A stretch of 58,295 nt of DNA from Octopus bimaculoides (taxonomy: Eukaryota), in NCBI RefSeq assembly GCF_001194135.2, contig NC_068986.1, forward strand, positions 73,072,535 through 73,130,829, written 5' to 3'. Positions 10,955 through 40,551 of the stretch are shown here, piece by piece. The notes under the pieces are model-generated. The model ran no database searches. It had not been told where the DNA came from and saw nothing but the letters and a program-made list of their open reading frames with translations. Numbering within the stretch: position 1 is the stretch's first letter; the number at the start of each line of letters is the position of its first letter. The position numbers were made by a program, and so were the translations under genes.

Positions 10955-11041
10955 GTAAGTAAATAAATTATTTCTGTTGTTAGTAATTACTTTTGGTAAT
11001 GATCTGTGATCTGCATTTCATTAATTATTAGAAATAACTTT

Positions 11042-12500: not shown

Positions 12501-12666
12501 GAGTTGATGAAGACTGGGGATCAAACTGATTGAACTGTAGTGCAGATGTTAATATTCAAAATATTTTCATCTTCATAGATTAAAAGTTTATTATCCTATT
12601 CTGTAATATGAATTACAATATTTAATAGTACTCATTATAATATTTCAATTCTTATTTTATTCTTAG

Positions 12667-17521: not shown

Positions 17522-18309
17522 CTTTTATCTATTCCATTCTGTAACTCATATATATNNNNNNNNNNNNNNNNNNNNNNNNNNNNNNNNNNNNNNNNNNNNN
17601 NNNNNNNNNNNNNNNNNNNNNNNNNNNNNNNNNNNNNNNNNNNNNNNNNNNNNNNNNNNNNNNNNNNNNNNNNNNNNNNNNNNNNNNNNNNNNNNNNNNN
17701 NNNNNNNNNNNNNNNNNNNNNNNNNNNNNNNNNNNNNNNNNNNNNNNNNNNNNNNNNNNNNNNNNNNNNNNNNNNNNNNNNNNNNNNNNNNNNNNNNNNN
17801 NNNNNNNNNNNNNNNNNNNNNNNNNNNNNNNNNNNNNNNNNNNNNNNNNNNNNNNNNNNNNNNNNNNNNNNNNNNNNNNNNNNNNNNNNNNNNNNNNNNN
17901 NNNNNNNNNNNNNNNNNNNNNNNNNNNNNNNNNNNNNNNNNNNNNNNNNNNNNNNNNNNNNNNNNNNNNNNNNNNNNNNNNNNNNNNNNNNNNNNNNNNN
18001 NNNNNNNNNNNNNNNNNNNNNNNNNNNNNNNNNNNNNNNNNNNNNNNNNNNNNNNNNNNNNNNNNNNNNNNNNNNNNNNNNNNNNNNNNNNNNNNNNNNN
18101 NNNNNNNNNNNNNNNNNNNNNNNNNNNNNNNNNNNNNNNNNNNNNNNNNNNNNNNNNNNNNNNNNNNNNNNNNNNNNNNNNNNNNNNNNNNNNNNNNNNN
18201 NNNNNNNNNNNNNNNNNNNNNNNNNNNNNNNNNNNNNNNNNNNNNNNNNNNNNNNNNNNNNNNNNNNNNNNNNNNNNNNNNNNNNNNNNNNNNNNNNNNN
18301 NNNNNNNNN

Positions 18310-18356: not shown

Positions 18357-18389
<33 letters not shown>

Positions 18390-20605: not shown

Positions 20606-21567
20606 TCTGGCGGAATTCTGGTTTAAGCACTCCGGTTAATGTTTACTTGAACTCCCGATCACCAAAACAAGATTTTTCCCTCATAACTTTCAGGAAAACG
20701 TGTGTTATTTAAGGGCGATTTAGCTGGTGTTTTTAACACATCCCACGACCACCTGATACTGTTCACGTTTCTTTGTCACTCTGAAATGTATGTATGTTTT
20801 TCTATATTTTTCTCACCATAGACACATTCTATGGAATGATGATGCACCCAAGGGTGATCCATTGCTGGGATTTATGCAAAAAAATTCGNNNNNNNNNNNN
20901 NNNNNNNNNNNNNNNNNNNNNNNNNNNNNNNNNNNNNNNNNNNNNNNNNNNNNNNNNNNNNNNNNNNNNNNNNNNNNNNNNNNNNNNNNNNNNNNNNNNN
21001 NNNNNNNNNNNNNNNNNNNNNNNNNNNNNNNNNNNNNNNNNNNNNNNNNNNNNNNNNNNNNNNNNNNNNNNNNNNNNNNNNNNNNNNNNNNNNNNNNNNN
21101 NNNNNNNNNNNNNNNNNNNNNNNNNNNNNNNNNNNCCGCATATTTTGGAAACAAAAAATTCTGAAAAAAGTTAAAAATGAAGGAAATGGGGGTGGAGGGT
21201 GGTAATTTGGAAATGTTGATTTTTGCCAATTTTTTGCAGATTTGTATTCCCTGTGGCCGAAAAGCAGGGTTTGTGTCGAAAAAAAAAAAAATTTTAGGGT
21301 GGTTTTTGGGGTGGGGGACGAGCGGAAGTCTTGTCAAAATTCGGACTGTCTATTTTAAACTATGATTTTAAAAGAATTTAAAAAAAGAGTGGAAATTTTA
21401 GGATTGGTGGGGGGCAAGGGGAAGTTTACAAAATTTAAGAAAAAATTTCTTTTTCATAATTGTATGAATTTCTGTGTGTAGAAGACAAATTGGCAATTTC
21501 TTGAAAATTCCAAAAAATAAAAAAGTTATGAGGGGCTATATGGAGTGCTTAAACCAGATTTCTACCT
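20606..21567. mobile_element. Kolobok-like non-autonomous DNA transposon (spans a gap)
   Basis: Inverted repeats GAATTCTGGTTTAAGCACTCC / GGAGTGCTTAAACCAGATTTC; right end ...ACCT|TTAA; left end degenerate after TTAA. Confidence 0.4.
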
Positions 21568-23024: not shown

Positions 23025-23118
23025 ATGTCATTTTATAAAGAATACAAAGTGTGGAACACAGAACATAATGTTCAAAAGGAAGTGAAAGCAGAAAGTCGGG
23101 AAGATTTGCTCATTAAAG
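23025..23118 (+). CDS. DFFA-like: DFFA/ICAD-like CIDE-N gene B, coding exon 1 (MSFYKEYKVWNTEHNVQKEVKAESREDLLIK)
   Basis: Acceptor tatttttag at 23001-23002, ATG in gaccATGt context, donor AAAG|gtaaat at 23119. Same 94-nt coding length and phase as gene A exon 1. Confidence 0.88.
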
Positions 23119-24275
23119 GTAAATATGACTTTTTTTTGAAGATAGGATTGTTATTGAAATTTGTTCAAATCCAACGTAACTTCTAATTTATTTAGCTTCA
23201 AGTTAGCTCTGGCTGAGCAGACTTGTAATCAAGTTTTCCATTGTTCTGATAATTCTATCAATTTTGTAGTTATTTCTAATAGATTGAACAACCACATGGG
23301 GGTTCTCTTATTGATAAGTGACATTGACATCACAAATTACACTCTTATCTTGGTATCTCTAAATCATATTTGAAAGTGATATTGCTGTATTGTCATTATA
23401 ACTTGTACTAAGACCCTTAAATGAGATACATATTTCTTAAAGGCTTGTTGACTATGTAGAAGGATGAGGTTTGATAAGGTAAGAAAGTAAGGATGTTTGG
23501 ACAATTTGCTAAGGGATTAGTGGTCCATATTCTGTCACTGACATTCAGTATTTGCAAATCAGAACTGATTTAATGTGTTGGACATTCCTTTAAAGTCTAT
23601 CTAAAAAAGATCACATACAAATCATACATTTTATGCAAATGTCATTAATCTTTTATTAAAACTCAAAGTTGATGAAAGAAAATTCTAGTCTAACATATTA
23701 ATTGGACAGCTTAGATCACAGAAATTAACATTTAAAATGGATCTTTATCAGCTCTATACTGTCTGTTCTTGAAGAATATGAAACTTCTTGCACTGGGTTT
23801 GATATGTATGGATACCCATAATACTAGCAACAGCAGAAAATATTGCAATTTTAAACAGTTGCTGATCTTATGCAGTGCTGCAACAAATAATTGTGTATGA
23901 CACATGGTAGGTGCAGGTGATGCTCGTTTCCAGTCTTCCATGGTCAAGTATTACCTTACTTGGAAACATGTAAGAATTAGCAACAGGAAGGGCATCTGTC
24001 TATAGAAAATCTGTCTCAATAAATTTTGTCTGATCCATGCAAGCATGGAAAAGTGGACATTAAATGATGAGTGTGATGATGGCATACACATACACACATA
24101 CATTTAGTTACTAATGCTAACCACTTACCTATAATTTTCTTTCTCTTACTGCTGTCTCAATATTTGTTTTACACAACTAGTTGACTTTATATCATATTGA
24201 TTTAACCTTCCTCTTATTTTTATTGTCTCACCTCCATCACCAACTTTAGACTTAATCTGTTGGGACCCACTTTAA

Positions 24276-24493
24276 CCCTTTAACATTCAGATTATTCTGT
24301 CAAATATAATGTGCTTATTTACATTGTTTTGAATTAATCCCACATTATGTTGCAACTATGAGATTTTCATGATGTGATTGCTTGTTTTTAGAATGACATT
24401 GTAGGGTAGGTGTGGAAGGCTGCATCTAGCTGGTTTGAACATAAAACAGGTAAAATATTTAGGCCGGATATGGCCAGTTTGAATGCTAAAGGG
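24276..24493. mobile_element. piggyBac-type MITE, same family
   Basis: TTAA|CCCTTTAACATTC...GAATGCTAAAGGG|TTAA. Confidence 0.8.
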
Positions 24494-26630
24494 TTAACAC
24501 AACCAGTTGCTTTAGCAGAGTCCACTCTGTTGTAAGTATTCTCCAGTGTGAAGATTACCACCACTTGCACCTCTTACTAGTTTCAGAGACCCTAACAAAG
24601 GCCATGGCTACTGCCTTTCTTCCTCTGATTAAGCCATAAAAAGACCAAAAATACCCTTTCCAGAACAATATTCCTTTCTCCTGGTATTTATAACAAAAGC
24701 ATTAACCATTATTAACTTTAAAAAAAGCTGAGTATTTCCATTAACGCTGACAAACTGCTAAAGAAGTCTCCAAACTGCTCAAGAGTAGACCTTATGGAAC
24801 ATTATGCATTTTTTAATATCTTGATTTTCGTGAAAATCTGGTATAATTTTAATAGTAGCTGCCACTGTTGTTTTTCCATGCTTGCATAACTCTTTTCTAT
24901 CTCATCACTTGTTGCAGTCCTTTGTCATCTTCATGAGACAAAGCTTCAGCTTTCACCACTTTCTATCTTCCTTCCACATACTTTTCGTTTGGATCACTTA
25001 ATATTTCTTTACCCACCTATAATCCTCCATACATATCCTTTATCTTTTACTTGTTTCAGTCATTAGACTGTGGCCATGTTGGGGCACCACCTTGAATTTT
25101 TAATTGAATGAATCAATCCCAGTAGTTTTTTTTACTTACTTTATACGTTTTTTTTTTACTTTACTTGATACTTATTCTATTGGTCTCTTATGCTGAACCA
25201 CTCAGTTACAAGAATGTAAACACAACACCACTAGTTGTCAAGCAGTGGTGAGGGACAAACACTGATACAAGCCACACACATATATATATGGGAACCTTCT
25301 TTCAGTTTCCGTCTTCCAAATTCACTCACAAGGCTTTAGTTGGCAGCACTTGACCAAGGTGCCACACAGTGGGACTGAACCCAGAACCATGTGGTTGGGG
25401 AAGCAAACTTCTTACTATACAGCCACGTTTGCATCTATATCTTTTCTCTTGTGTATTACATCTAAGTCTTCTTATTTATGGTTTTTCTCTTTATCAATTT
25501 TTCATTCTTTCTTCTTATTGATAATTCCCCAGTGTCTGTTAAGTTCCTTCTAGCCTATTAATGTATTTTTATAACATTTTCTAAAACATGTATATCCCAC
25601 CCCATATTACTTTCTTAAGACTTTCTATTTGTAAATTAAAAATGTTGATTAAATTCTATTTCTATCTGGAATCTATGTGGGATGATATGCTAAATTTTTA
25701 GTATTGTCTGCTTATCTAAATTTGATTAATTTACCAGTTTACCATTTAAACAAATTAATTAGGTTCAGAGAGCAGGTTTTTCAGACAAGTGAGAATGCTG
25801 GGAATAATACACATTCTGAACGCTTGTGGGGCGGGGAAAGAATGGAGAATATAGTTCAAATGTTTGTAACAAAGTAAATCCTACCTAAAGTATCCAAGGA
25901 CCATGTAGTGGTATTCAAGTTGGCAGTGTGTTGACAACTAACCATGTAATAATATGAAAGTGGAGCACGTTAGTGACCATCCATACAGGGTTATTATAGT
26001 GGGCAGTGTGTTAAGTGCTTAAGATATTGAATATCAGTGTGTAAAGGTACATGTTCCTTCAGCTGCGTAGAGGCCCTTTCCATTGATTATTTTGTTTGCT
26101 GTTGTCTCATTTAAACTGACCATATCTAGCTCAATTATTGTACCTGTTTTTATGTTCAGACAAGACAGATCTGGCCTCTCACACTTACCCTACAATATCA
26201 TTCTAAAAGCACACAGTCACATCTAGATAATGAATGGTAAATGCAAAATGATGTGAATAAATAAGCTTTGCAATTGACAGGATGATCTGAATGCTTAAAG
26301 GGTAAAGGAAGAAAATATAATACATTATGTTTTGGTGCATATTACCATTTGTTAACAAATAATATTTAACCCAATAGAGGCGGCGATCTGGGCAAAATGC
26401 TTAGCAGCATTTCATCTGCCCTTTTATTGTGAGTTCAACTTCCAATGCGGTCCACTTTGCCTTTCATCCATTCAGCGTTGATAAAATAAGTACCAGTTGA
26501 ACACTGGGTCAACATAATCGACTTATCCCCGCTCCCAAATTACTGGTCTTCTGCCAAAATTTGAAACCATTATTTAACCCAATAATATATAAATTATTAA
26601 TAATATTACTTATTTCTTTTTAAATTCCAG

Positions 26631-26789
26631 CAAAAGCTGAATTTGACATTGATTCTACAACAGAAGTAAAATTAGTTTTGGATGAAGATGGAACCGAAGT
26701 TGATGATGAAGACTACTTTCACTTTGTTTCTTCGGACACAACACTTCAAATTTTGTTGTCATTTCAGTCATGGTCACCAATCCATTCAT
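26631..26789 (+). CDS. DFFA-like: DFFA/ICAD-like gene B, coding exon 2 (CIDE-N core LDEDGTEVDDEDYF)
   Basis: Acceptor tttctttttaaattccag|CA, donor TCAT|gtgagt; 159 nt, the same length and phase as gene A exon 2; EDGTEVDDEDYF motif. Confidence 0.93.
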
Positions 26790-29700
26790 GTGAGTATCTA
26801 ATAGTAACATATCTTATGTTTTCTCTTGAACTTTTTAATTAACAATTGTTATTTCAAATAAATTTAAAGAAAGTATAAAAAAAAAGTTTCTTCCTGAATA
26901 CACGAGCAAATTTTGCACATATTTTTCTATTTCTGTACAGTGGCTGTGTGGTAAGTAGCTTGCTTACGAACCACATGGTTCCAGGTTCAGTCCCACTGCA
27001 TGGCACTTTGGGCAAGTGTCTTCTACTATAGCCTCAGGCTGACCAAAGCCTTGTGAGTGGATTTGGTAGACAGAAACTGAAAGAAGCCCGTTGTATATAT
27101 GTATGTGTTTGTCCCCCCAACATCGCTTGACAACCGATGGTGGTGTGTTTAAGTCCCTGTAACTTAGCGGTTCGGCAAAAAGACCGATAGAATAAGTACT
27201 AGGCTTACAAAGAATAAGTCCTGGGGTCGATTTGCTCGACTAAAGGCGGTGTTCCAGCATGGCCACAGTCAAATGACTAAAACAAGTAAAAGAGTAATGT
27301 CAGATCAATAATTCTGTAAAGTCGTAGTAGCTATATTATTGGCAAGTCCTTTACAAGAAGAGTCAAGTATAAAACTTCCACATTGCTTTCAAGGCTATTG
27401 TAAATCCTACAGGTTGGAGATTTGTTTTGGTATTGATGCCAATGTTGCAAAATGCTACAGGTAAAACGGTGTCTTAGAGATTTCATAGTTGGCATTAGGA
27501 AGGGCATCCAGTTGAAGAAACCAAGCCAAAACAGACAATAGAGCCTGGTGTGGCATGGAAAATGAACATTAAATGTTGATAATGAAGATGATGATGATAA
27601 TTGCTTTTAAAAAGTTGTTCTGGATTTATTTTTTTTGCATGGTGACATTAATGGAGTAAATGGCTTGTCTCAACACCATAGCAATTTCTCTGTTGGTGTT
27701 AGGAGAACACTGTCATCAAGCAGGTAGAGAATATTGAAGCAACCAATGTCTTCACATATACAGATGATCTTTTCCATATGCAACAACATTGTTTTTAATC
27801 TTGTCAGTTTATATCTATCCATGTTTTGTGGGTTTCAATAACTAGAAAAGAACCTTCATCACTGAGCTCTCAAGTCAATCAGAATCATGCTAAACATTAG
27901 AAATTATACTGTATTTTACATTTAATCTTTCGGGTTTGCATAAGTTTATAAACTCAAGTTTTTCACATGTTGTTATAACAAGTATTTTATACTTAAATTT
28001 GAGATGAGCTGCTGTTAACATGAGAATTTTTTTAACTGTTAATCTTATCTTTAGAGATGAACATTAAAAAACATATTTACATGCACATTTCTCTTTCTAC
28101 ATGTGTGTAGCCATGCAACTCTTCTACAAGAACCTGCTCATCCCCTTCTTTCGTGTTTTACCTTTTGCCCCATCATAAAGCTGACTCACCTCCCACTCCC
28201 TCAGGGCTTGTAGTCTTGTGAGTTTTATAATTACCTTAATAGTGCTTTTGGCAGGAAAAAAAAAGCACCCAGTACACTCTGTAAAGTGGTTGGCGTTAGC
28301 AAGGGTATTCAGCTGTAGAAACCATGCCAAAGCAGACACTGGAGCACAATGCAGTGCTTGGAGCCATTGGTTCCTGTCAAACCACCCAACCTATGCCAGC
28401 ATGGAATGTAGATATTACATGATTATGATGACTATTTTTCAGTTGATTTTACTCCAGATTGACATCAGAAAGTGTAGATAATATCAGGCATTTTTACTTG
28501 ATATTCTTTTCAATGCCTGTTGTCATGATGACGATAAACAGATGAATTAAGTTGGATTGGATGGAACTTGCAGAAGAGGGAGACCCAAGAAAACAGGGGA
28601 CAAAGTAGTGAAGGCTTATCTCAAGATGCTGAATCTCATGGAGTGGATGACTGGTGATTTGCTATGCTTAAGAAGACCCCTCCATCACAACAGAAATAAT
28701 ATCCTAAAACTACTTAGGTTATGCTTCTGCTTGTAGGACCCTGTCCAGCCCCACCTCTCTCTGCCCTGTTAAGCATTTTCCCACATTTCATCCCCTAATA
28801 CCTCTCATTTCTCTATCTATAGTATAATACTCAGTTGCTGTAATCACTTTCATTTCTCATTATCATCCCTGTCCACACTGTTTTCATCAGTCATCTCCTT
28901 TTCTGCCTTCACATACAGCTCATCCCTCTCACATCTAACATCACACCCTCACTTACCATAATGCCCTTGAGCCACTTGCATATCTCTCACCATCACTTGC
29001 TTACAAGCACCTCTGTTCCCATCTTTTCCCCATCATGATCCACTGTATCTTGAAATGCTCCAGTACTTCTGACTTCTTTCCAAATTACTCAGCATTTTTT
29101 GTTGTCTAAGGAGAGTCATTATCCCAATATAATTAACACACACACTGGTTCAATTCCACTCCTTCTCTTTATTATTAGTCAATTGGTTAAATATCCAACT
29201 AATTTGTTTTGTTTTTGAGAAACAAAAGCAAAACAAATTAGTTGGATATTTTACCAATTGACTAATAAAGAAAAGGAATGGAATTGAACCAGTGTGTGGG
29301 TTAATTATACTGGCATAATGACTCTCCCTAGCCCACAAAATTTGTTTCAACACTCAAATTCACATAAAGAATCTTGCAAACCAAATACAAAAACAAAGTA
29401 AACTACTCAGCCTTGTATCTCTATTACAAATCATCTAGGCTTGCTCTTTCATCACACTCTTGTCTGTCAAGACCTGGCATACAACCATTATATGAGAAAC
29501 AATTGCTAAGAATCATAGTTTATTTAGTTCAAATGTTTGACTTCAGTTGTCTGTATGTATAAGTGTATGCTTGCTATTTTTGCAAATGGTAGCTGTCAAC
29601 CTTCAACCATAGTTCACCATAAAGCACCTGGATCAGGACATTATTATAATGATTTCATAGCAAAAGTAAAAAATATATTTTAACTTTAAGCACTGTAACT

Positions 29701-29902
29701 TGTGTGTAAGAGTTCAGCTTTACAAATTGAAGACAAATTTGAGAGTACATTGTTTAAAATATACTCCATTTCCAATGTACAAAATGACAAAGATGAGTTA
29801 AGTACACTTCTCACTGCAGATTTCACTCTCAGTTTCCTATGATGTAATATGGAAAAATAAATAAGAAGTTATAATACTGCTGTAAAGTTCTAGAAAATCA
29901 GT

Positions 29903-30754
29903 TTAGTTGGTACTAATATATATCATTACATTGTCTCTTTTAATCTTACCAACTTCATCATCTTCATAGGTATTGGCAGGAGTGGGAAAACCATCATCAA
30001 AAGGAAGTTGGTCTTCTTCTAAAAAGTCATTAAACTCTTCTTCAGTGCTAAGACAGAAATTATGTAAGACACAGCAAGCCATTATAACATTTGGAATGAG
30101 TGCAGTGCGGGTCATTCCAACAAATTGTAGTCGACACCATCGACCTCTGAGCAGATTAAAAGCTTGTTGTGTAACCAGTCGAGTTTCAGTTAATCTTTTA
30201 TTGTACTCTTGCTGATCTGGAACGAGGCAAGTTTCATCTAAGAAAGGGGTCAACAACCATTTTTTCAGTGGATATGCTGCAGCCCCAAGCAAGTGTATGT
30301 CTTCTTTAATAAAGAAATTTGTTGGATTATTTTCTATTTCATGGAATATATCTGATTCACACAAAACAACAGAATCATGGACAGAACCAGGCCAGCCAGT
30401 GTAACAATCAGTAAACTTCATGTTGTGATCACAGATTGTCTGCAATACCATTGTATGAGTCTTTTTACGGTTGATGTATACTTCAGGGTGATCTTTTGGG
30501 CTGAGAATTGATATGTGTGTAGTAGCCATGATACCAAGAACATTTGGAAATGCACTGATGTTGTAGAAACCTTGGACAATGTCTTCAACCTCAGTATGGT
30601 TTGGCCATTTGATAACAACTGTTTTCAGTTTGTTTAATCCTTTGATTATGCTGTCAAGAATAACTGATGCAGAAGATTCACAGACTTGAAATTGTTTTGC
30701 AATGTTACGTACTGATTCACCTTTGGCACCAAGAAACCGCAAACACATCAGCAC
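29903..30754 (-). CDS. HARBI1-like: PIF/Harbinger transposase-derived gene, coding exon 2 (283 aa; HTH plus DDE_Tnp_4-type core with substituted catalytic triad)
   Basis: Acceptor ttttaccattcag|GTG. Motifs WP, FPNVLG..THI, YINRK, Q.ICD...KF, GWPGSVHD, LLG..AYPL..WLLTPF, YN...TR....AF.LL.GRW, CCVLHN. The 852-nt frame is uninterrupted. Confidence 0.92.
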   Translation of the reverse strand: MLMCLRFLGAKGESVRNIAKQFQVCESSASVILDSIIKGLNKLKTVVIKWPNHTEVEDIVQGFYNISAFPNVLGIMATTHISILSPKDHPEVYINRKKTHTMVLQTICDHNMKFTDCYTGWPGSVHDSVVLCESDIFHEIENNPTNFFIKEDIHLLGAAAYPLKKWLLTPFLDETCLVPDQQEYNKRLTETRLVTQQAFNLLRGRWCRLQFVGMTRTALIPNVIMACCVLHNFCLSTEEEFNDFLEEDQLPFDDGFPTPANTYEDDEVGKIKRDNVMIYISTN

Positions 30755-31420
30755 CTGAATGGTAAAATGTTTATAGCAAATAATAATCCAAAATTAAAGT
30801 AGGAATATGTAGACTAAACATCAATATACAAAATGTGAAAGCTTGAGAAATCTGTAGTTTTTTTTTTTTTTTAAGCACAGGTCAGATAGATTTTAATATT
30901 TCGGCTATTCTTTAAGACATTATATGAGGAAACAGCCTACCTTTATCTCCTTGAATAATTAGTTTTATCTTACAGTTCTTCTTCAACACTGACATTAATA
31001 TTAGGCAAAACAGGTTTTGTAAATTAAAGTATTATCCTTAGGATGTGTATTTGTGAAAATGAAGGTTCACAGTTTGGAAACCATTAGCATTGTGCCCTCA
31101 GAAAAGGAAATCAACAATTGCTAGCTCAGAAATTCTAAGTACAGCTCAGTGTATGTGTGTTCTGAGTGTTTTATTAATTAACAGTGTTAAGTTTAAACCT
31201 TTCAGTTCTAAGAGCAAAGGAGGGGTGGGGTGGATGTCATCAGTAGAATAACAGGGAGATAGTCTGTAGTATAAAGTGATACGGAGACAAGTCAAAAACT
31301 GTTTACATGTCTTTTTATAATGATATTGATAAAAATGTTACAAAAAAACAAAGAATTAATTTTGCAACTACAAATTTATGACTTCCATTGGATTATGAAA
31401 ACACCTATTATCTCTGTTAA

Positions 31421-31620
31421 CCCTCTAGCATTTAAAGCAGCTATAATATTCTCTAGTTGAAACTGGCCAGATCCAGCTTCTTGCATCTATCCTACAATGT
31501 CATTATAAAAGTAAACAATCACATCATAAATCTCAAGGTTGTGAGATAATGCATGATGAATGCAAAGCAATATGAATAAATAAGCAGTACATTTGACAGA
31601 GTAGTCTGAATGCTAAAGGG
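31421..31620. mobile_element. piggyBac-type MITE inside the intron of the Harbinger-derived gene
   Basis: TTAA|CCCTCTAGCATT...GAATGCTAAAGGG|TTTA. Further partial copies at ~26109-26303, 42330-42533 and 47960-48166. Confidence 0.7.
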
Positions 31621-33582
31621 TTTATCCTCAAAATAACTGTCATCATCATCATTGTTTAACGTCCGCTTGCCATGCAAGCATGGGTTGGACGGTTTGACTG
31701 AGGACTGGTGAGCCAGAGGCTGCACCAGGCTCATGCATTTAATTTCAAAGAAAACAAAATGGGATAATAATAATACAAAAACGATAGAAATTATTCCTTC
31801 CAATAGCTGAATGTGTCAACTGCCTTTGATATGCTAATAAACCAATATCTCAGTGCTGATTTTCCATTAGAACTGTGCAGTTAATATGAAGAATGTTGTC
31901 CTCATCTATATATTCAATCATTATTATTAAGCAAATGTAAACCAAATTACAAAAGAATTTAGGGATAGCATTTGTTCTCTTGTACCAGTTCTGTAAATAA
32001 CACTGTGGCATTTTATTTTGAGGCAAGGCAAGCTAGGTAAGTCACTGATTAGTCCTTGGACAATTTCAATATGCTATCTCCTCTGTCTTTTCTCCTGACA
32101 CTATAATATCTCCTGGTCCTCAGAGCTAGCTGGATCCATACTACCTCACACAGGCATCCCACAGCCACTAATCTCTGCTCCTTTTATGGCCCTTTTTGTG
32201 TACCAGCTTCAGACCCCATACTAATCACGTAATCCCAGTCCTTCTTTCTCCAAGTGCTATCCTCTGGAATGATGTTCAGAGAAGTCTAACTCTTGAATCT
32301 TTTTTCATGCATCATTATTCACCTGTTAGCTACTCTACTATTTAAAATAGTCAGTGGCGAACACCAATTAGCAATAGTTTCTTGTGAATCTTTGATCATT
32401 TGTTTTTGAAAGAGAGAGCAAGCGAGAAGGGATTTCCCTCAAAGCACTCAGTTTAAAGGAATCTGAAGGCCTGTCTTGTACTGCTTTTCTCGTGTTGGAT
32501 CAACAAAGCTACTTTGTCAAAAATAATTTACATTTAAAAAATGGCTACATAGACTGTACCACGGGCTAATTTCTTCCTTTCAATAATCCCAACTGAAAAC
32601 AAACAAGGGAAGCATTAACATTATACTTTCTACAAGTTACATAGAAAGAACAAAACCAAGATAGATAGGCTTGTTTGGCAACCTAATAGAAATAACCCGT
32701 AATAATAAATATTTTCTTTAAACGTTTTAAAGATAGGAGATGTATTAAGATAATTTTTTGGACGATGAATCTCAAAATATTTAATTAACTTATGAGTTTG
32801 CTGCCTTTAGGTTTTGTTGATGAAAAAAAATTAAAGGAATATCTAATTTTTAATATTAAAAATATTTGTTACATTGGGATGACGAGTTTTGTGGTGTTGT
32901 CTTCGTATACATTCAACAGACGACGAATGACTTTTATGTTGTTCTGTGTTAAGTCAGCCAGGATTTGAGGGAGACTTAGCTGCTATTTCCAGCACTTAGA
33001 GACTGTCGTTGTAGAGTTGAACGTCAGTTTATTCTACATTTTACTGAATGAACCAGCAGAGAAAAATAACTGGTTATAAGTAGTTGTCAAGATACCAAAA
33101 TTACAACTAACACCATGAAATTATGTTTGAAGTCTATTTCCTTACGTGATATTTACCATTTTAATTTTCCATGCTAAAATAGGAAAGTACTTAAGATAGT
33201 AACTTCGTATATATTCAAATTAACGACGTTGGTTCGGTAAATTTTTACGCCGTTAGTTCTACGTAGTCACTTGATTTGCTAGAAATAGCAATCAAATTTT
33301 CTCTAAATCACACACATTGCTGTCTTCAAAAAAAGGAAGCACATGTTAACGTCCTAGATATACTATATCAGAATAAAAGACAAAGTGGTAATAGCTGGAA
33401 CGTCCTTCATCATTGATCTGCTCGATAACAGTTAACCTGGGGCTAAACCAACTTCGTAAACCCAGTGCAGACGTTCAAACAATAAATAAAAAAACATATG
33501 CAGACAGTGATAAAAGAGATAAACATCCCCAGACATTGGTAGTAAATACATTGTTTATTTAATGTTATTATTGTATGTTTAC

Positions 33583-33954
33583 CTTCCTGTCCAACGGAAC
33601 TGGTTTCCTGCCTCGGGTTTGATTCTCTCTCAAGATATGCGGCGATAGGTTTGAACATAGTGTTTCGAATGTTTCCGGATCCATTCGAAAATATTGACGG
33701 AATTGGTTGTCCCTAAAATTAAATAACACATCTCTTTCATTTGAACCTCGTACTTGAGCTTTGTTTTGTTTGTTAGATGTTGCGGCTGATTCACCTTTTC
33801 TCGCTAACGTCGCCAGCAAGCAGGTCGCCATATTATTATCCTTGTTGCCAGACAAGCTATTTTTCCTGAGAGGAAAACAATCATCCATTAGAAACAGATC
33901 GCATGCTGCATACAATGTAGCCAGAAAGGCCGTATCTTCCTGAGAAACTTCCAT
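33583..33954 (-). CDS. HARBI1-like: PIF/Harbinger transposase-derived (HARBI1/ALP1-like) gene, coding exon 1 (124 aa)
   Basis: ATG at 33954, Harbinger N-terminal motif FRQYFRMDPETFETL..L.P and RGRKPVPLDRK, then phase-0 donor AAG|gtaaac at 33582. Confidence 0.85.
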
Positions 33955-35300
33955 AGCTGTTAGAATTTATTCACCTTGTGATTAGTTGTCGTTCACAACA
34001 TACATGAATGGAATTCAATGCCAAACGCGCGTAGAATGCTCATTCATAAAATATTACTCAGAACGAGGCTCCCCCTCCCTTTACTCAACAAATTTTTCAT
34101 AATTTAATATTTTTTTTTTTTAAATCTTGCTATAATTCTAATTTTAACTCATATATTAAATTTTTTAATCCCAAAATAAATATATCGTCATCGCTGCTAT
34201 TGCTGCCGCCGTTGCTGTCTTCACTGTTATCATCATTATCATGATCATGATCATCATCATCGTCGTCTTCTTTTTATGTCGACTGTCTATATTGACATGG
34301 GCCAGGCGTGTAATCTCAGTTCTGAATTCGTTCTTATTTGAAGTTACTGTTCCCTACTCCCCGAATGAACGTATGTCGTCAGTGTTCCATTTTTGACCTA
34401 ATTTCTACGACTGGATGCCCTTCCTAATGCTAGTCACTTTACAGAATGTATTGTGTACATTTGACATGTTTCATTCCTAATATGTTTTATCATCTTTCTG
34501 TCATTAGACTGCAGCCATGCTGGGGCACTGCCTTGAGGAATTTTAGTCAAATGAATCGACCCCAGTACATTTTTCTAATCCTGGTACTCACTCTATTGGT
34601 CTCTTTTGCTGAACTCCTAAGTTACAGTGGTGCAAACACAACACCAGTTGTCAAGTGCTGTTTGGGGACAAACACAGAGACAAAAACACACATAAGTATA
34701 TGTATGACAGGCTTCTTTCAGTTTCTGTCTACCAAATTCACTCACAAGGTTTTGATTGGCTTGAGGCTATAGTAGAAGATACTTGCAAAGGTGTCATGCA
34801 GTAGGACTGAACCTGGAACCATGTGATTGGGAAGCAAACTTCTTACTACATAGCGATTCCTAGTAAGAATGGTTATAAATGCTATCGACATTTTAGTATA
34901 TAATTTTCCACTATGTATCTTTCCACACCATGTATAACAAAGATGTACTTCCATCATCAGATATAATAACAGAATCAACATTCACACTGCATTGAAAAGA
35001 AATTCCATCAGCATTTCCATTCATGTCATCTTATGTTTAGGCCAAACTCTTTAGCAAAACATGTAAAGCTGTTCAAAACTGTTGATATGCCTTCCAGTTT
35101 TTTTTACAGGAAGATAGAGTCATCTGCATTTATTATAATTGCCACTTTTGTTGTGAAAATAGTCCTTTAGTTTGGTTTCACTGTCATGGACTTTGATTGC
35201 TTCAGCATGACCTTACTTGTAATTCTCAGCAGATGTCATGCTGGAGCACTGCCTTTGGTACGAGTATGTATGTATATATATATACATATGCATATATATA

Positions 35301-36500
35301 CAGGGTTTGGACAAAATGATGGAAACACCTAGCATCATAGCATCATGATTTTGAAATTTCTATAAAACCGTCAAAAGCTTGTTTATTTTTATGTTTTTTG
35401 ATTTATTATTAGTGTTGCTTAATATGTTTTGCTAAGATTGCTGTTTCTGTTCAGATATCATCAGAAAAAGGTAATTGATATTCATTAAAATGACAGATCT
35501 ATTGGATTTTCAAAGAGGTCAAATTGTTGGTGCTCGTATGGCAGGTACCAGCACAATGAAAACAGCCGAAATGTTTGATGCATCAAGAAGTACTGTCTCG
35601 AAAGTGATGACAGCTTTTGAGAAAGAACTCCGGAAGGAAACAAAAACTTTCTGATAGGGACCTTGTGATTCTTACGCGGATTGGTAGAAAGGATCACAAA
35701 AGTACAGCTCCCAAAATTACTGCAGAGCTTAATGACCACCTCGAGAACCCAGTTTCCACAAAAACTGTTCACCGAGAGCTGCACAAAGCTGGAGGGCTGC
35801 AATCAGAAAACCACTGTTTTCACAAACAAATGTTGCAAAGCATTTAGAGTGGAGTAAAAACCTACAGAATTGGTCCCTAGAGCAGTGGAAGAATGTTATT
35901 TTCTCGGATGAGTCAGCCTTTACCTTATTTCTGACCACCGGCCGAGTATACGTGTGGAGACAGTCAAAAGAAGCATTTGACCCAGACTGCCTTCTTTCAA
36001 CTGTTAAACATGGAGGAGGATCTGTGATGATCTGGGAGTGGGGGTTATATCTTGGAAATCCGGCAGCCCAATGGTTTCCCTTCATGGCAGAATTAATAGT
36101 CAAGACTATTTAAGCATCTTATCTGATCAAATTCATTCTATGGTTGCGGAACTTTCTGGAGGGAAACACAATCTTTCAGGATGATAATGCACCAATTCAC
36201 ACAGCCTAAGTTGTTACTGAATGGCATGAGGAACATTCTAGTGAAGTTGAACATCTTATCTGGCCACCACAGTACCCAGATCTCAATATTATTAAACATT
36301 TATGGTGCAATTTAGAAAAACAAGTAAGGAGTTGATATCTTCCATCATCATCACTACAAGTACTGGAGACTGTTTTAGCTGAAGAATGGACAAAAATTCC
36401 TTTGGATACAATTCAAACTTTGTACGAGTTCATACCTCATAGAATTTAAGCTGTAATTACTGCCAAAGGCAGTCCTACTCCATATTAAAATAAATTTGTA
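35301..36500 (+). mobile_element. Decayed Tc1-family transposon (left TIR plus frameshifted transposase; right TIR missing)
   Basis: TA|CAGGGTTTGGACAAAATGATGGAAACACC; ATG at 35490 (MTDLLDFQRGQIVGAR); GRKQKLSDRD, VIFSDES, FQDDNAPIH, WPPQYPDLNII; stop at 36488; frameshifts and stops. Confidence 0.9.
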
Positions 36501-36519
36501 TATATATATGTATATACAC

Positions 36520-37596
36520 AAACCCCTTCAGGTAGATGGCCCTGCTCAATATGTAGAAAAGGAGTAGGTAGTAACTCTATAAGATGTACCCGGTGCAAGC
36601 TATGGACACATAAGAGGTGCAGCAACACCAAAGGCAGGTTAACTAGGAAGTTAGTTTTTGTTTGTGGCAGATGTTCAGGTGCAATAAAGACTGTAAACAA
36701 ACAGGAAACAACTTCTATCTCATTCCAGGGTGAAAAACTAGAGGTAGTCGATAGCTTCCGCTATCTGGGCGACCAAGTTAGTAGTGGGGGTGGGTGCGCA
36801 GAAAGTGTAGCTGCTAGAATAAGAATNNNNNNNNNNNNNNNNNNNNNNNNNNNNNNNNNNNNNNNNNNNNNNNNNNNNNNNNNNNNNNNNNNNNNNNNNN
36901 NNNNNNNNNNNNNNNNNNNNNNNNNNNNNNNNNNNNNNNNNNNNNNNNNNNNNNNNNNNNNNNNNNNNNNNNNNNNNNNNNNNNNNNNNNNNNNNNNNNN
37001 NNNNNNNNNNNNNNNNNNNNNNNNNNNNNNNNNNNNNNNNNNNNNNNNNNNNNNNNNNNNNNNNNNNNNNNNNNNNNNNNNNNNNNNNNNNNNNNNNNNN
37101 NNNNNNNNNNNNNNNNNNNNNNNNACATTGGGCCTCACCGAGGCGATGACTACTGACCGAGACCTTTGGAAATGTGCTGTGCGTGAGAAGACCCGGCAAG
37201 CCAAGTAAGATCGTTGCCAGTGCCCCTGGACTGGTTCTTGTGCGGGTGGCACATGAGATGCACCATTTTGAGCGTGGCCGTTGCCAGTACCGCCTGACTG
37301 GCTCCCGTAGGATTTTTGAACGAGATCGTTGCCAGTGCCCCTGGACTGGCTTGTGCGAGTGGCACATAAAAGACACCATTTCGAGCGTGGCCGTTGCCAG
37401 TATCGCCTGACTGGCCTTCGTGCAGGTGACACGTAAAAGGACCTACTTCACTCTCTGAGTGGTTTGGCGTTAGGAAGGGCATCCAGCTGTAGAAACTCTG
37501 CCAAATTTAGATTGGAGCCTGGTGTTGCCATCCGGTTTCACCAGTCCTCAGTCAAGTCGTCCAACCCATGCTAGCATGGAAAGCGGACGTTAAACA

Positions 37597-37625
<29 letters not shown>
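36520..37625 (+). mobile_element. 5'-truncated RTE-clade LINE (PHD finger, RT C-terminus, 3' UTR, (GAT)n tail; spans a gap)
   Basis: Open frame 36525-36826 (WPCSIC...CGRC...EKLEVVDSFRYLGDQ), ORF end DLWKCAVREKTRQAK*, then a 3' UTR ending ggacgttaaacaa(tga)n. Confidence 0.85.
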
Positions 37626-37628
<3 letters not shown>

Positions 37629-37682
37629 ATACACACACACTCATATGAGTGAATTTTGTAAACAGAAACTGTATGGAAGTGT

Positions 37683-37754
<72 letters not shown>

Positions 37755-38093
37755 CATACAGGGTGATTATGTATGTATATATGTATTAGTAGGTATGGGG
37801 AAATATTTCCTTGCTTGGGAATAGGTGAGGACTGGCAACAGGAAGGGTATCTAGCCACAAAAAAATCTGTCTCAACAAATTTCATCTGACCTACACTAGC
37901 ATGGAAAAGTGGATGTTAAATGATGATGATCACAATATATTTCATGTATTGAATATACTTTATATATTGGTCTGTCTAATTTACTTATCCATACCATTTA
38001 CTTCTAAATCCAGTCAAGTTTAAATCTCTTGAACACTACTAATTGTATTCTATACAGAGAATATTTGGCTCTCATCTATGAACTATATATATA

Positions 38094-38147
<54 letters not shown>

Positions 38148-39034
38148 NNNNNNNNNNNNNNNNNNNNNNNNNNNNNNNNNNNNNNNNNNNNNNNNNNNNN
38201 NNNNNNNNNNNNNNNNNNNNNNNNNNNNNNNNNNNNNNNNNNNNNNNNNNNNNNNNNNNNNNNNNNNNNNNNNNNNNNNNNNNNNNNNNNNNNNNNNNNN
38301 NNNNNNNNNNNNNNNNNNNNNNNNNNNNNNNNNNNNNNNNNNNNNNNNNNNNNNNNNNNNNNNNNNNNNNNNNNNNNNNNNNNNNNNNNNNNNNNNNNNN
38401 NNNNNNNNNNNNNNNNNNNNNNNNNNNNNNNNNNNNNNNNNNNNNNNNNNNNNNNNNNNNNNNNNNNNNNNNNNNNNNNNNNNNNNNNNNNNNNNNNNNN
38501 NNNNNNNNNNNNNNNNNNNNNNNNNNNNNNNNNNNNNNNNNNNNNNNNNNNNNNNNNNNNNNNNNNNNNNNNNNNNNNNNNNNNNNNNNNNNNNNNNNNN
38601 NNNNNNNNNNNNNNNNNNNNNNNNNNNNNNNNNNNNNNNNNNNNNNNNNNNNNNNNNNNNNNNNNNNNNNNNNNNNNNNNNNNNNNNNNNNNNNNNNNNN
38701 NNNNNNNNNNNNNNNNNNNNNNNNNNNNNNNNNNNNNNNNNNNNNNNNNNNNNNNNNNNNNNNNNNNNNNNNNNNNNNNNNNNNNNNNNNNNNNNNNNNN
38801 NNNNNNNNNNNNNNNNNNNNNNNNNNNNNNNNNNNNNNNNNNNNNNNNNNNNNNNNNNNNNNNNNNNNNNNNNNNNNNNNNNNNNNNNNNNNNNNNNNNN
38901 NNNNNNNNNNNNNNNNNNNNNNNNNNNNNNNNNNNNNNNNNNNNNNNNNNNNNNNNNNNNNNNNNNNNNNNNNNNNNNNNNNNNNNNNNNNNNNNNNNNN
39001 NNNNNNNNNNNNNNNNNNNNNNNNNNNNNNNNNN

Positions 39035-39350
39035 CAACGATCTTACTTGGCTTGCCGGGTCTTCTCACGCACAGCACATTTCCAAAGGTCTCGGTCAGTA
39101 GTCATCGCCTCGGTGAGGCCCAATGTACGAAGGTCTTGCCTCACCACCTCAGCCCAGGTCTTCCCGGGCCTACCTCTTCCACGGGTTCCCTCAACTGTTA
39201 GGGTGTGGCACTTTTTCACGCAGCCATTCTCACCACATGTCCATACCAGCGCAATCGTCTCTCTTGCACACCACAACTGATGCTTCTAATGTTCAGCTTT
39301 TCTCTCAAGATACTTACACTCTGACGGGTATTCACATTGACATTACACAA
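39035..39350 (-). mobile_element. RTE LINE ORF2 3' end (inverted relative to the 36520-37625 copy)
   Basis: VEGTRGRGRPGKTWAEVVRQDLRTLGLTEAMTTDRDLWK; 90 nt are identical to 37125-37214. Confidence 0.85.
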
Positions 39351-39458
39351 GTATCATAAAAGCATGAAACTATTAGTAGCTCTTTTGGTATTGATATTTA
39401 GCTCTCACTTGGATGAAGTACTTTTTTTGTTGAATCTACCTCTATATTGGATCTATAA

Positions 39459-39494
<36 letters not shown>

Positions 39495-39535
39495 ATACAC
39501 ACACACACACACACATATAAACTTTATTTTTACAG

Positions 39536-39657
39536 TGAGAGCTTCATATGATGTTTGTGATGGACCAGTGGATACATCTAATGATCTTATTTTGCTGTTA
39601 TCTGGAATAAAATCTGACTTGGCCAAATGTTTGGCTTTATCTGATGATCATTTGGAG
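39536..39657 (+). CDS. DFFA-like: DFFA/ICAD-like gene B, coding exon 3 (contains DVCD|G)
   Basis: Acceptor tttatttttacag|TG, donor GAG|gtgagt; 122 nt, phase 1/0; homologous to gene A exon 3. Confidence 0.87.
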
Positions 39658-40344
39658 GTGAGTTGTGAATTTGACCATATTGGATATCAGGAATATTCAC
39701 ATTCATGTTGATGTTACTGATTTATTGTTGTGAATATTTGCTGTGGTTTAGTGGTTAGGCTATTTGGCTCACTCATCTATTAACATGTACTCACTTCCAA
39801 AAGCTACAATTGGAGTTATTTCATCATTTGGAATACAAGCTTTCAAAAGTTGAGTGTACAAGACACCTTGTGACCTCCCCAATTTCAACAGCATAATGAA
39901 CCTATCAGTAGCCTCTTAGATCAATGGTTCTCAACCATTTTTACCTATGAACTCCTTTGATTCTTATTTTACTCAAGGGAAGAGGGACCCTGATAGCCAT
40001 TCAGCATCTAAAATCTCCTTTTACATTTTTATGATTAAACATTATTCGGAATTGTATAAAAGAATGCTTAAATATTTTGTAGAAGTATAACCAATTTATT
40101 GCTCATAAATTTTAACAGCAAAATCTTATATGAACCCCAGTTGAAAACGACTGTCCTAGATTCTTCTTTTAACCCAAACATGCCATAAAGCTACCATTGT
40201 TACTGAATATATGTAATGGAAATAAGAAAGGGAAACTGAGAAATATCTCAGAAATTAACATTTTTTTGAAATTATGTTTCTTACTCATCTACAATAACAG
40301 TTGTTAATGATCTTTGTTTTTTTTTCTCTTTTTTTTTCTGTCAG

Positions 40345-40551
40345 GAAATTACTAAAATGCCTGTTTCTGACCTAGCTACTATTTTAGTAGACAGTGAACA
40401 GTTTGCAAGAAATTTCAAGGAGGCATGTGAAATAGAGTTGATTACACGTGAGGACAATGATGACTTGTTACGGCTTATACGACTGGCTACTGAACATCAA
40501 AATGGAAGTGTGAAAAGACAAAAGATTGATAACACTGAATCTGATGATTAA
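40345..40551 (+). CDS. DFFA-like: DFFA/ICAD-like gene B, terminal coding exon 4 (ends ...VKRQKIDNTESDD*)
   Basis: Long polypyrimidine acceptor tttttttctgtcag|GAA, in frame with the tracked ORF 40357-40551. Total CDS 582 nt (193 aa). Confidence 0.87.
   Translation, partial: EITKMPVSDLATILVDSEQFARNFKEACEIELITREDNDDLLRLIRLATEHQNGSVKRQKIDNTESDD

What the first reader, a model, noticed from the sequence alone, without database searches (positions are those of the whole stretch)
29903..33954. Intact but nuclease-dead Harbinger transposase gene nested antisense inside an ICAD-like gene
Seen: a spliced 407-aa ORF (124+283 codons, GT-AG, phase 0) on the minus strand within intron 2 of gene B. It has no stops or frameshifts, unlike the decayed Tc1, pogo and mariner transposases in this window. 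All three canonical PIF/Harbinger catalytic residues are replaced: GAIDGTH->GIMATTH (A201, 30524-30526), LLGDSAY->LLGAAAY (A282, 30281-30283) and VERAF->TQQAF (Q320, 30167-30169). The HTH region, GSVHD and CCVLHN scaffold are retained. Its 2.8-kb intron has itself accumulated a MITE and a repeat fragment, and I see no TIRs or Myb/SANT second ORF. Known: Harbinger transposases have been domesticated repeatedly (vertebrate HARBI1 with NAIF1; plant ALP1 and HDP1 as chromatin regulators working with Myb/SANT-type partners). Inference: an old, possibly mollusc- or cephalopod-specific, domesticated pseudo-nuclease acting as a chromatin or protein scaffold. The equivalent intron of gene A has no such gene.
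Basis: partly seen in the sequence, partly recalled or inferred. Interest (0 to 1): 0.85.

Follow-up and report, generated by a model that had tools for sequence, protein, structure and literature searches.

The report
Dead Harbinger transposase kept by cephalopods
A jumping-gene enzyme that has lost all three cutting residues has been kept intact as an ordinary single-copy, spliced gene in octopuses, argonauts and cuttlefish, so it is a transposase recruited for a host function, a known kind of event not yet described in cephalopods.

Summary
Window 33954..33583 and 30754..29903 (minus strand, GT-AG, phase 0) encode a 407-aa protein identical to Octopus bimaculoides LOC106873678. It has a DDE_Tnp_4 (PIF/Harbinger) domain, with A201/A282/Q320 where 82-87 of 90 non-cephalopod homologues have D/D/E.

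It is not a transposon copy.
- Orthologues with the same two-exon structure and the same A/(A or V)/Q triad occur in O. sinensis, Argonauta hians, Sepia pharaonis and other decapodiforms. Decapodiforms carry two paralogues.
- Pairwise dN/dS is 0.05-0.10, and 0.03-0.05 in the dead catalytic domain.
- In Octopus and Argonauta the gene sits antisense in intron 2 of the same CIDE-N gene. Only its two exons are conserved inside that intron.
- I found no TIRs, no second Myb-like ORF and no other copy.
- Sepia transcripts are spliced exactly at the homologous junction.
- Among 1.84 billion representative proteins the clade is isolated (812 and 636 bits, then 246).

Verdict: a coleoid-wide domesticated, catalytically dead Harbinger transposase. 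It is a new member of a known kind (HARBI1, ALP1, HDP1, insect PLGs). A role as a non-catalytic DNA- or partner-binding adaptor is inferred, not shown. The host gene is a 193-aa CIDE-N protein; calling it ICAD-like rests on a sub-threshold DFF-C match.

The parts
33583..33954 (-). Exon 1 of the Harbinger-derived gene (codons 1-124). It covers a poorly structured N-terminal region with the conserved LYAACDxFLMDD motif, and the start of the helical (HTH-like) region.
   Evidence: The ORF and the GT donor were read directly. It is conserved with Argonauta L001 10001-10369 from the ATG onward. dN/dS for exon 1 is 0.08-0.17.
30755..33582 (-). Single phase-0 GT-AG intron (2828 nt). It contains interspersed-repeat fragments at 31456-31635 and 31640-31732.
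   Evidence: Splice sites were read. The same intron position occurs in Argonauta, S. pharaonis and both paralogues on the ENA decapodiform contig. The repeats recur 5-8 times in the window.
29903..30754 (-). Exon 2 (codons 125-407 plus stop). It covers the rest of the helical region and the DDE_Tnp_4 RNase-H-like domain, with A201 (30524-30526), A282 (30281-30283) and Q320 (30167-30169) at the catalytic positions.
   Evidence: Pfam places DDE_Tnp_4 at residues 202-356, E=1.4e-29. Catalytic columns were checked. dN/dS of the domain is 0.03-0.05. In the AF2 model (pLDDT 85.8) A201 lies on strand 196-207, A282 just after strand 278-280 and Q320 on helix 303-329.
23025..40551 (+). Host gene B, a 193-aa CIDE-N protein with exons 23025-23118, 26631-26789, 39536-39657 and 40345-40551. 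The Harbinger-derived gene lies antisense in its intron 2.
   Evidence: Exons were mapped by conservation with Argonauta and by splice enumeration. Pfam gives CIDE-N at E=3.3e-19 and DFF-C at a sub-threshold E=0.0035.

Best explanation
This is a host gene of coleoid cephalopods that arose by molecular domestication of a PIF/Harbinger transposase.

Shown:
- It is single-copy in the window, has two exons, and its orthologues are transcribed and correctly spliced.
- It has been kept since before the octopus-cuttlefish split.
- In octopods it sits in a fixed position, antisense in intron 2 of a CIDE-N gene.
- The three metal-binding residues D-D-E are replaced by A-A/V-Q in every member.
- The whole protein, and most of all the dead RNase-H-like domain, is under strong purifying selection.

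Inferred from established knowledge of DDE enzymes: without any of the three carboxylates the protein cannot cut or join DNA. For PIF/Harbinger, mutating a single triad residue already drastically reduces transposition (stated in PMC4671723).

Inferred by analogy, not tested: the conserved helical N-terminal region and the RNase-H-like fold are kept as binding surfaces. The protein would act as a non-catalytic adaptor that binds DNA and/or a Myb/SANT/MADF-type partner and brings it to a nuclear, probably chromatin-modifying, complex. This is how ALP1-ALP2 work with PRC2, how HDP1-HDP2 work in a histone acetyltransferase complex, and how HARBI1 pairs with NAIF1.

I give about 0.9 to 'domesticated, non-catalytic host gene' and about 0.4 to the specific adaptor mechanism.
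For: - Identity and domain.
- Dead triad in 9 of 9 coleoid sequences, against D/D/E in 82-87 of 90 other homologues.
- Orthologues in O. sinensis, Argonauta hians and S. pharaonis, plus unnamed decapodiform transcripts.
- Identical intron position in all genomic copies.
- dN/dS of 0.073 (bootstrap CI 0.047-0.105) for Octopus-Argonauta, 0.061 and 0.100 for two decapodiform pairs, and 0.03-0.05 for the DDE_Tnp_4 domain.
- Synteny. The gene is nested antisense in the orthologous CIDE-N gene in Octopus and Argonauta. Conservation inside the intron is limited to the two exons. It starts at the ATG and ends at the stop.
- No TIRs.
- One copy in the window.
- An isolated clade. Among 1.84e9 representatives the scores are 812 and 636 bits, then 246.
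- Monophyly at 100/100.
- Spliced S. pharaonis transcripts.
- Confident RNase-H-like model with the three substituted residues on the expected elements.
- All domestication criteria used for insect PIF genes (PMC9710019) are met.
Against: - No functional data of any kind.
- I found no Myb/SANT partner in the host intron or within 10 kb of the decapodiform copies.
- No Pfam HTH model recognises the cephalopod N-terminal region, so DNA binding is unproven.
- I could not count copies genome-wide in O. bimaculoides; no cephalopod genome collection was searchable.
- I did not see splicing in O. bimaculoides itself.
- The only Logan contigs for O. bimaculoides carry the unspliced exon-1 ORF (P0099).
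- No solved structure of the family exists for comparison.
Confidence: 0.8

Rival explanations
1. It is a recently inserted or slowly decaying Harbinger transposon copy whose ORF happens to be still open, with no host function.
For: It has DDE_Tnp_4 homology. It lies in an intron full of other transposon debris.
Against: - Orthologues sit at the same nested position in Argonauta.
- The same gene occurs in cuttlefish.
- dN/dS is 0.05-0.10 while synonymous sites are saturated.
- There are no TIRs.
- No close paralogue appears in the protein databases.
Confidence: 0.02
2. It is a domesticated gene that still works as a nuclease or recombinase, using non-canonical catalytic residues located elsewhere in the fold.
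For: The RNase-H-like domain is the most constrained part (dN/dS 0.03-0.05). This shows that the fold matters.
Against: All three carboxylates are replaced by residues that cannot bind metal (A, A/V, Q) in every member. The neighbouring residues of the D1 motif also changed (GAIDGTH to GIMATTH). For PIF/Harbinger, loss of one triad residue drastically reduces transposition (PMC4671723).
Confidence: 0.05
3. The conserved feature is the nested antisense arrangement itself. On this view the gene is kept because its transcription regulates the host CIDE-N (ICAD-like) gene, or the reverse. Alternatively the dead nuclease works in the same apoptotic DNA-fragmentation pathway as its host.
For: The nesting in intron 2 of the orthologous CIDE-N gene is conserved between Octopus and Argonauta, where dS is about 1.2.
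Against: Purifying selection acts on the amino-acid sequence, not merely on transcription. In three decapodiform loci no CIDE-N exon lies within 10 kb of the gene, although larger introns could hide one. Conserved nesting is also the passive outcome of an old intronic insertion.
Confidence: 0.08

Closest known systems
[quoted passage not shown]
   Same: Both derive from a Harbinger transposase. Both have a degenerate catalytic triad; ALP1 has DGA (PMC4671723). Both are single-copy conserved genes with one conserved intron near the 5' end. NCBI's automatic name for the O. sinensis and Argonauta orthologues is 'protein ALP1-like'.
   Different: The origin is independent. Plant ALP1-like proteins share only 25-27% identity (P0093, P0095), and the coleoid clade groups with animal elements. 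Here all three residues are lost, not two. PRC2 association and an ALP2-like Myb partner are untested.
Vertebrate HARBI1 (with its Myb-like partner NAIF1)
   Same: Both are animal genes domesticated from a Harbinger transposase, single-copy and conserved across a large clade. An earlier RefSeq name of this protein was 'putative nuclease HARBI1'.
   Different: HARBI1 keeps the DDE triad (my own knowledge of Kapitonov and Jurka 2004 and Sinzelle et al. 2008; not re-tested here). This gene has none of it. Proteins named HARBI1 from vertebrates are only 27-34% identical. The closest relatives are invertebrate elements with intact DDE (Mytilus 37%, and P0007 of unknown origin 39%). It is therefore not an orthologue.
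Insect domesticated PIF transposase genes (DPLG, APLG, LPLG, BPLG; PMC9710019)
   Same: The evidence pattern is the same: an intact ORF, conserved exon-intron structure (BPLG1/2 also have two exons), microsynteny, no TIR or TSD, single copy, and dN/dS of 0.04-0.33.
   Different: The host phylum is different and the origin independent. No adjacent MADF/Myb gene was found here, whereas several insect cases are co-domesticated pairs.
Active PIF/Harbinger transposons of molluscs, e.g. the Mytilus element encoding P0009
   Same: They share the DDE_Tnp_4 fold at 34-39% identity, including the GSVHD and CVLHN motifs.
   Different: The Mytilus gene keeps D-D-E. Its intron is at another position, after residue 38. 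It has a Myb_DNA-bind_4 gene 2.7 kb downstream. The octopus gene has none of these.

Membership tests
PIF/Harbinger transposase superfamily (by descent) | DDE_Tnp_4 / Plant_tran transposase domain | tested here: met
   Pfam PF13359 E=1.4e-29 (103 bits, cutoff 24.8). PF04827 E=1.1e-7.
Active PIF/Harbinger transposon | Intact D-D-E catalytic triad | tested here: not met
   A201, A282 and Q320, in columns that read D/D/E in 85, 87 and 82 of 90 non-cephalopod homologues.
Active PIF/Harbinger transposon | Terminal inverted repeats and 3-bp target duplication flanking the element | tested here: not met
   The only flanking inverted repeats are interspersed repeats present at least 8 times elsewhere in the window. 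Octopus-Argonauta conservation stops at the ATG and at the stop codon.
Active PIF/Harbinger transposon | Second ORF encoding a Myb/SANT-like DNA-binding protein inside the element | tested here: not met
   tblastx of host intron 2 between Octopus and Argonauta finds only the two transposase exons. Caveat: the window has N gaps at 36827-37124 and 38148-39034. As a positive control, the precomputed gene annotation lists a Myb_DNA-bind_4 gene beside the Mytilus relative.
Active PIF/Harbinger transposon | Multiple near-identical copies in the genome | tested here: inconclusive
   There is one copy in the window and one O. bimaculoides protein in the clade among 5.8e9 clusters and 1.84e9 representatives. 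The genome itself could not be searched.
Domesticated PIF/Harbinger transposase gene (criteria of PMC9710019) | Orthologues at a syntenic position in distantly related species | tested here: met
   The gene is nested antisense in intron 2 of the orthologous CIDE-N gene in O. bimaculoides and Argonauta hians. Synteny in decapodiforms is not resolved.
Domesticated PIF/Harbinger transposase gene (criteria of PMC9710019) | Purifying selection (dN/dS significantly below 1) | tested here: met
   Nei-Gojobori dN/dS is 0.05-0.10 with bootstrap upper bounds of 0.14 or less for the three unsaturated pairs.
Domesticated PIF/Harbinger transposase gene (criteria of PMC9710019) | Intact ORF and conserved exon-intron structure | tested here: met
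   The two exons and the phase-0 intron between ...PLDRK and VLMCL... are found in Octopus, Argonauta, S. pharaonis and both paralogues of the ENA decapodiform contig.
Vertebrate HARBI1 orthologue group | Orthology to vertebrate HARBI1, and a retained DDE triad | tested here: not met
   The triad is lost. Vertebrate proteins named HARBI1 are 27-34% identical and rank below invertebrate elements. The coleoid clade is monophyletic with a long stem. A true HARBI1 reference sequence was not included in the tree.
Plant ALP1 / PRC2-accessory group | Orthology to ALP1, and association with PRC2 through a Myb partner | not testable with these tools
   Sequence shows only distant homology, 25-27% to plant ALP1-like proteins. 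The interaction needs experiments.
ICAD/DFF45 (host gene B) | N-terminal CIDE-N domain | tested here: met
   PF02017 E=3.3e-19 at residues 5-80. PDB CIDE-N chains of CIDE-B, DREP2, CIDE-3 and ICAD match at E of 2e-11 to 4e-6.
ICAD/DFF45 (host gene B) | C-terminal DFF-C domain | tested here: inconclusive
   PF09033 gives E=0.0035 and 17.8 bits, below the 25-bit cutoff, at residues 107-185. The PDB DFF45 C-domain 1iyr matches at E=0.24. The protein is 193 aa, against 331 aa for human ICAD (the human length is from my own knowledge).

The most novel reading that the evidence does not exclude
The gene may be older than coleoids, and the first documented mollusc-lineage domesticated Harbinger transposase with a dedicated, still unknown partner. 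An unnamed relative (P0115, run SRR29346471) also lacks the triad (S/Y/D). Its ORF is preceded by a splice acceptor at exactly the coleoid intron position. The nearest DDE-intact relatives have no intron there. If P0115 is a deep orthologue, for example from a nautiloid or another mollusc class, the dead transposase would have been kept for far longer than about 270 My. In that case it would be an adaptor for a conserved nuclear complex, with a decapodiform duplication allowing the two copies to diverge in function.
Probability: 0.25. Interest if true: 0.6.

Novelty: new member of a known kind. Interest (0 to 1): 0.5.

Why it matters
Domesticated transposases are a recurrent source of new regulators, such as RAG1, HARBI1, ALP1, HDP1 and the insect PLG genes. 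In the searchable literature no Harbinger-derived host gene has been described for cephalopods, a lineage noted for unusual genome and transcriptome biology.

This case is clean. All three catalytic residues are gone, yet the dead domain is the most constrained part of the protein, and the gene dates to at least the octopus-cuttlefish ancestor. That makes it a good system for asking what a nuclease-dead RNase-H fold is kept for. It also gives a concrete bait for finding its partner.

It also corrects the database names 'putative nuclease HARBI1' and 'ALP1-like'. The protein is very unlikely to be a nuclease, and it is not an orthologue of either gene.

Tried and rejected
- Structure prediction from the six cephalopod sequences alone failed (pLDDT 34.9). 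The 96-sequence alignment was needed (pLDDT 85.8).
- Foldseek against the PDB gave no match at E<=0.001. There were only weak hits to the Metnase, Mos1 and Tn5 transposase domains. A sequence search of the PDB found nothing. No Harbinger structure is available for an active-site overlay, and I could not read model coordinates to measure distances.
- The long inverted repeats 27012-27600 and 34227-34786 first looked like TIRs. I rejected that reading because they are common interspersed repeats.
I replaced that check with tblastx conservation between Octopus and Argonauta.
- A search of papers for the SRA/ENA run numbers, to name the unnamed species, found nothing. Only the S. pharaonis assignment, from 99.8-99.9% identity to its genome, is firm.
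- A link to gastropod 'ALP1-like' genes (Haliotis P0117 with D/D/Q, Lymnaea P0140 with D/D/S) was considered and rejected. Bootstrap support is 2/100, the Haliotis gene has no intron, and its host gene is different.
- The sister grouping with P0115+P0143 has only 43/100 support and is left open.
- A Biopython bootstrap run timed out and was redone with numpy.
- No CIDE-N exon was found within 10 kb of the decapodiform copies, so synteny there is unresolved.
Full report
**1. What is in the sequence**

On the minus strand, 33954..33583 (372 nt) and 30754..29903 (852 nt) join through a GTAAAC donor and a ...ccattcag acceptor in phase 0. The result is a 407-codon ORF with a single terminal stop. 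The protein is identical to XP_014776632.1, 'uncharacterized protein LOC106873678' of Octopus bimaculoides, so the window is octopus DNA. Pfam finds DDE_Tnp_4 at residues 202-356 (E=1.4e-29) and Plant_tran (E=1.1e-7), both signatures of PIF/Harbinger transposases.

**2. The catalytic triad is really gone**

- I aligned 96 homologues. At residues 201, 282 and 320, the 90 non-cephalopod sequences carry D in 85, D in 87 and E in 82.
- All cephalopod sequences carry A, A (or V) and Q.
- The codons are GCT/GCG, GCT/GCG/GCA/GTT and CAA/CAG. Each is one substitution away from GAT/GAC or GAA/GAG.
- The neighbours of the first aspartate also changed (GAIDGTH to GIMATTH).
- The family-wide motifs PGSxHD and LHN are kept.
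- An AlphaFold model built on the 96-sequence alignment is confident (pLDDT 85.8, pTM 0.83). It shows the expected strand-strand-strand-helix-strand-helix core. A201 lies on the first strand, A282 just after the fourth strand and Q320 on the long helix 303-329.
- No solved structure of the family exists for a closer comparison.

**3. It is a conserved gene, not a transposon copy**

*Homologues.* The homology search returns a tight group and then a gap:

| Sequence | Identity to the octopus protein |
|---|---|
| O. sinensis 'ALP1-like' | 96% |
| Argonauta hians 'ALP1-like' | 84-85% |
| Sepia (Acanthosepion) pharaonis CAE1322978 and unnamed relatives | 58-67% |
| Next hits (P0007, origin unknown; Mytilus), with intact D-D-E | 37-39% |

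An exhaustive profile search of 1.84 billion representative proteins shows the same gap. Two representatives score 812 and 636 bits, and the next scores 246. In a neighbour-joining tree of 62 sequences the coleoid clade has 100/100 bootstrap support and a long stem. Octopods and decapodiforms are each supported at 100/100.

*Gene structure.* The structure is shared. The Argonauta gene (L001 10001-10369 and 11874-12722), the S. pharaonis gene (L009) and both copies on an ENA decapodiform contig (L002, L012) all have one phase-0 intron between ...PLDRK and VLMCL.... One of these introns uses a GC donor (GCAAGT). The nearest DDE-intact relatives do not share this intron. The Mytilus gene is interrupted after residue 38, and a Haliotis relative has no intron.

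*Selection.* Nei-Gojobori estimates on a codon alignment are as follows:

| Pair | dN/dS | Note |
|---|---|---|
| Octopus-Argonauta | 0.073 | bootstrap CI 0.047-0.105; dS 1.18 |
| Two type-A decapodiform sequences | 0.061 | |
| Two type-B decapodiform sequences | 0.100 | |

Octopod-decapodiform synonymous sites are saturated. By region, the dead DDE_Tnp_4 domain is the most constrained (0.03-0.05). The helical region before it gives 0.04-0.07 and exon 1 gives 0.08-0.17.

*Synteny.* In both O. bimaculoides and A. hians the gene lies antisense inside a CIDE-N gene of 193 and 191 aa. blastn and tblastx between the two loci find six colinear conserved blocks: four host exons and the two transposase exons. 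Conservation of the latter starts at the ATG and ends at the stop codon. Nothing else in the host intron is conserved.

*Transposon hallmarks.* These are absent.
- The inverted repeats that flank the gene (27012-27600 and 34227-34786) belong to interspersed repeats found at least eight more times in the window, in both orientations.
- There is no second copy in the window.
- There is no conserved second ORF.
- The precomputed gene annotation does show a Myb partner when one is present. The Mytilus relative has a Myb_DNA-bind_4 gene 2.7 kb downstream.

*Transcription and splicing.* Short Logan contigs carry uninterrupted full-length ORFs with UTRs. Two of them (SRR6517992, ERR4031017) match the S. 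pharaonis genome at 99.8-99.9% in two blocks, with the 2.46-kb intron removed exactly at the homologous junction. I could not inspect octopus RNA directly.

**4. Additional anatomy**

- Decapodiforms have two paralogues, type A (P0003, P0100, P0102, P0004) and type B (P0005, P0006).
- Both lie on one ENA contig (ERZ21867824 ctg118036l), about 50 kb apart and convergent.
- Both are transcribed in the S. pharaonis run ERR4031017.
- Both keep the dead triad, so inactivation preceded the duplication and the octopod-decapodiform split.
- That split is usually dated to about 270 My. This figure is my own knowledge of Albertin et al. 2015 and was not checked here.
- One transcript, P0112, is intermediate between the two types and may be a chimeric assembly.

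**5. The host gene**

Gene B has exons 23025-23118, 26631-26789, 39536-39657 and 40345-40551 on the plus strand and encodes 193 aa. It has a strong CIDE-N domain (E=3.3e-19). Its DFF-C match is sub-threshold at 17.8 bits against a cutoff of 25. 'CIDE-N protein, possibly ICAD/DREP-like' is therefore the safe description.

Gene A is a tandem paralogue with exons at 1901-1996, 6591-6749, 10823-10954 and 12670-12804. It has no transposase-like sequence in its intron 2, although that intron contains an 823-N gap.

**6. How it most likely works**

*Shown.* This is a conserved, expressed, single-locus protein with a folded RNase-H-like domain that lacks all three metal ligands.

*From established knowledge.* DDE enzymes need these carboxylates. 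For PIF/Harbinger, a single triad mutation drastically reduces transposition (PMC4671723). The protein is therefore not a nuclease.

*Inferred.* The constrained fold and the constrained helical region serve as binding surfaces. This would match other Harbinger-derived proteins, which work with Myb/SANT-type partners in chromatin complexes:
- ALP1 with ALP2 and PRC2 (PMC4671723, PMC7282668).
- HDP1 with HDP2 (PMC5339849).
- HARBI1 with NAIF1.

No Pfam HTH model matches the cephalopod N-terminal region even at E<=10, whereas the Mytilus relative gives a weak HTH_Tnp_4 hit. DNA binding is thus an open question.

*Rivals.* A decaying transposon copy is refuted. Residual non-canonical catalysis is unlikely. 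A function tied to the nested arrangement with the CIDE-N gene is possible but unsupported outside octopods.

**7. Comparison and novelty**

The gene meets all the domestication criteria applied to insect PIF genes (PMC9710019). It is not an orthologue of vertebrate HARBI1 or plant ALP1, despite its database names. Identities are 25-34%, and the clade is separate and well supported.

Literature searches found no description of a cephalopod Harbinger-derived gene. It is a new member of a known kind. The find is solid and tidy, of moderate interest, and useful as a bait for discovering the partner and function.

**8. Open lead**

Two unnamed Logan proteins, P0115 and P0143, also lack the triad (S/Y/D and S/S/R). 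They group with each other (89/100) and weakly with the coleoid clade (43/100). P0115's ORF is preceded by a polypyrimidine tract and an AG at exactly the coleoid intron position. Naming their source organisms would show whether the domestication predates coleoids.

Noticed in passing
L002 and L012 (ENA ERZ21867824 ctg118036l, about 84.6 kb + and about 136 kb -); L006/L011 (ERR4031017): Decapodiform cephalopods carry two paralogues of the dead transposase gene. They lie about 50 kb apart in convergent orientation on one contig. Both are transcribed in a Sepia pharaonis RNA run, and both have the dead triad.
   Followed up: partly
L002 1782-1787: The intron of the type-B paralogue uses a GC-AG splice pair (donor AAG|GCAAGT) at the position where the other copies have GT.
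   Followed up: no
L013 1-931 (Logan SRR29346471), protein P0115; also P0143: These are unnamed relatives without the DDE triad (S/Y/D and S/S/R). P0115's ORF starts right after a ...ttttacag acceptor at exactly the coleoid intron position. They could be deeper orthologues or an independent domestication. The organism is unknown.
   Followed up: partly
L014 10001-11203 (Haliotis asinina), proteins P0117/P0259; Lymnaea P0140: Abalone 'ALP1-like' gene with triad D/D/Q. It has no intron, lies antisense inside a 906-aa gene and is at least 90% identical between H. asinina and H. rubra. Lymnaea has a relative with D/D/S. This looks like a separate gastropod domestication; the link to the coleoid clade has 2/100 bootstrap support.
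   Followed up: partly
L015-L017 3001-4778 and L017 7480-7778 (Mytilus): An identical 378-aa DDE-intact Harbinger transposase is annotated in three Mytilus assemblies. It has one intron after residue 38 and a Myb_DNA-bind_4 gene 2.7 kb downstream. It is either an active element or a co-domesticated HARBI1/NAIF1-like pair.
   Followed up: no
proteins P0031 (Pempheris), P0061 (Salarias), P0120, P0151, P0152, P0156 (Chara): Several other homologues in fish, a charophyte and unnamed samples have lost one to three triad residues. This hints at further unrecorded Harbinger domestications.
   Followed up: no
window 1901-12804 (+) and 23025-40551 (+): Two tandem CIDE-N genes. Gene A has exons at about 1901-1996, 6591-6749, 10823-10954 and 12670-12804. 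Gene B is the host. Their CIDE-N exons are only about 34% identical, so the duplication is old.
   Followed up: partly
window 35475-36430 (+): A frameshifted Tc1/mariner-type transposase remnant lies about 1.5 kb upstream of the Harbinger-derived gene, inside the same host intron. Pfam hits are sub-threshold (HTH_23, HTH_Tnp_Tc3_2).
   Followed up: partly
window 27012-27291, 34485-34786, 53362-53686, 54111-54449, 18387-18593, 7773-7988, 25043-25340 and others: An interspersed repeat of about 290 bp occurs in at least 8 copies in both orientations (68-90% identity). Two copies happen to flank the gene in inverted orientation and mimic long TIRs.
   Followed up: yes
window 554-563, 8247-9069, 17556-18309, 20889-21135, 36827-37124, 38148-39034, 49899-50523, 53693-53955: The window has eight runs of N (assembly gaps). 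Two lie inside host intron 2 and one inside intron 2 of gene A. Statements about absence in these introns therefore carry a small caveat.
   Followed up: yes
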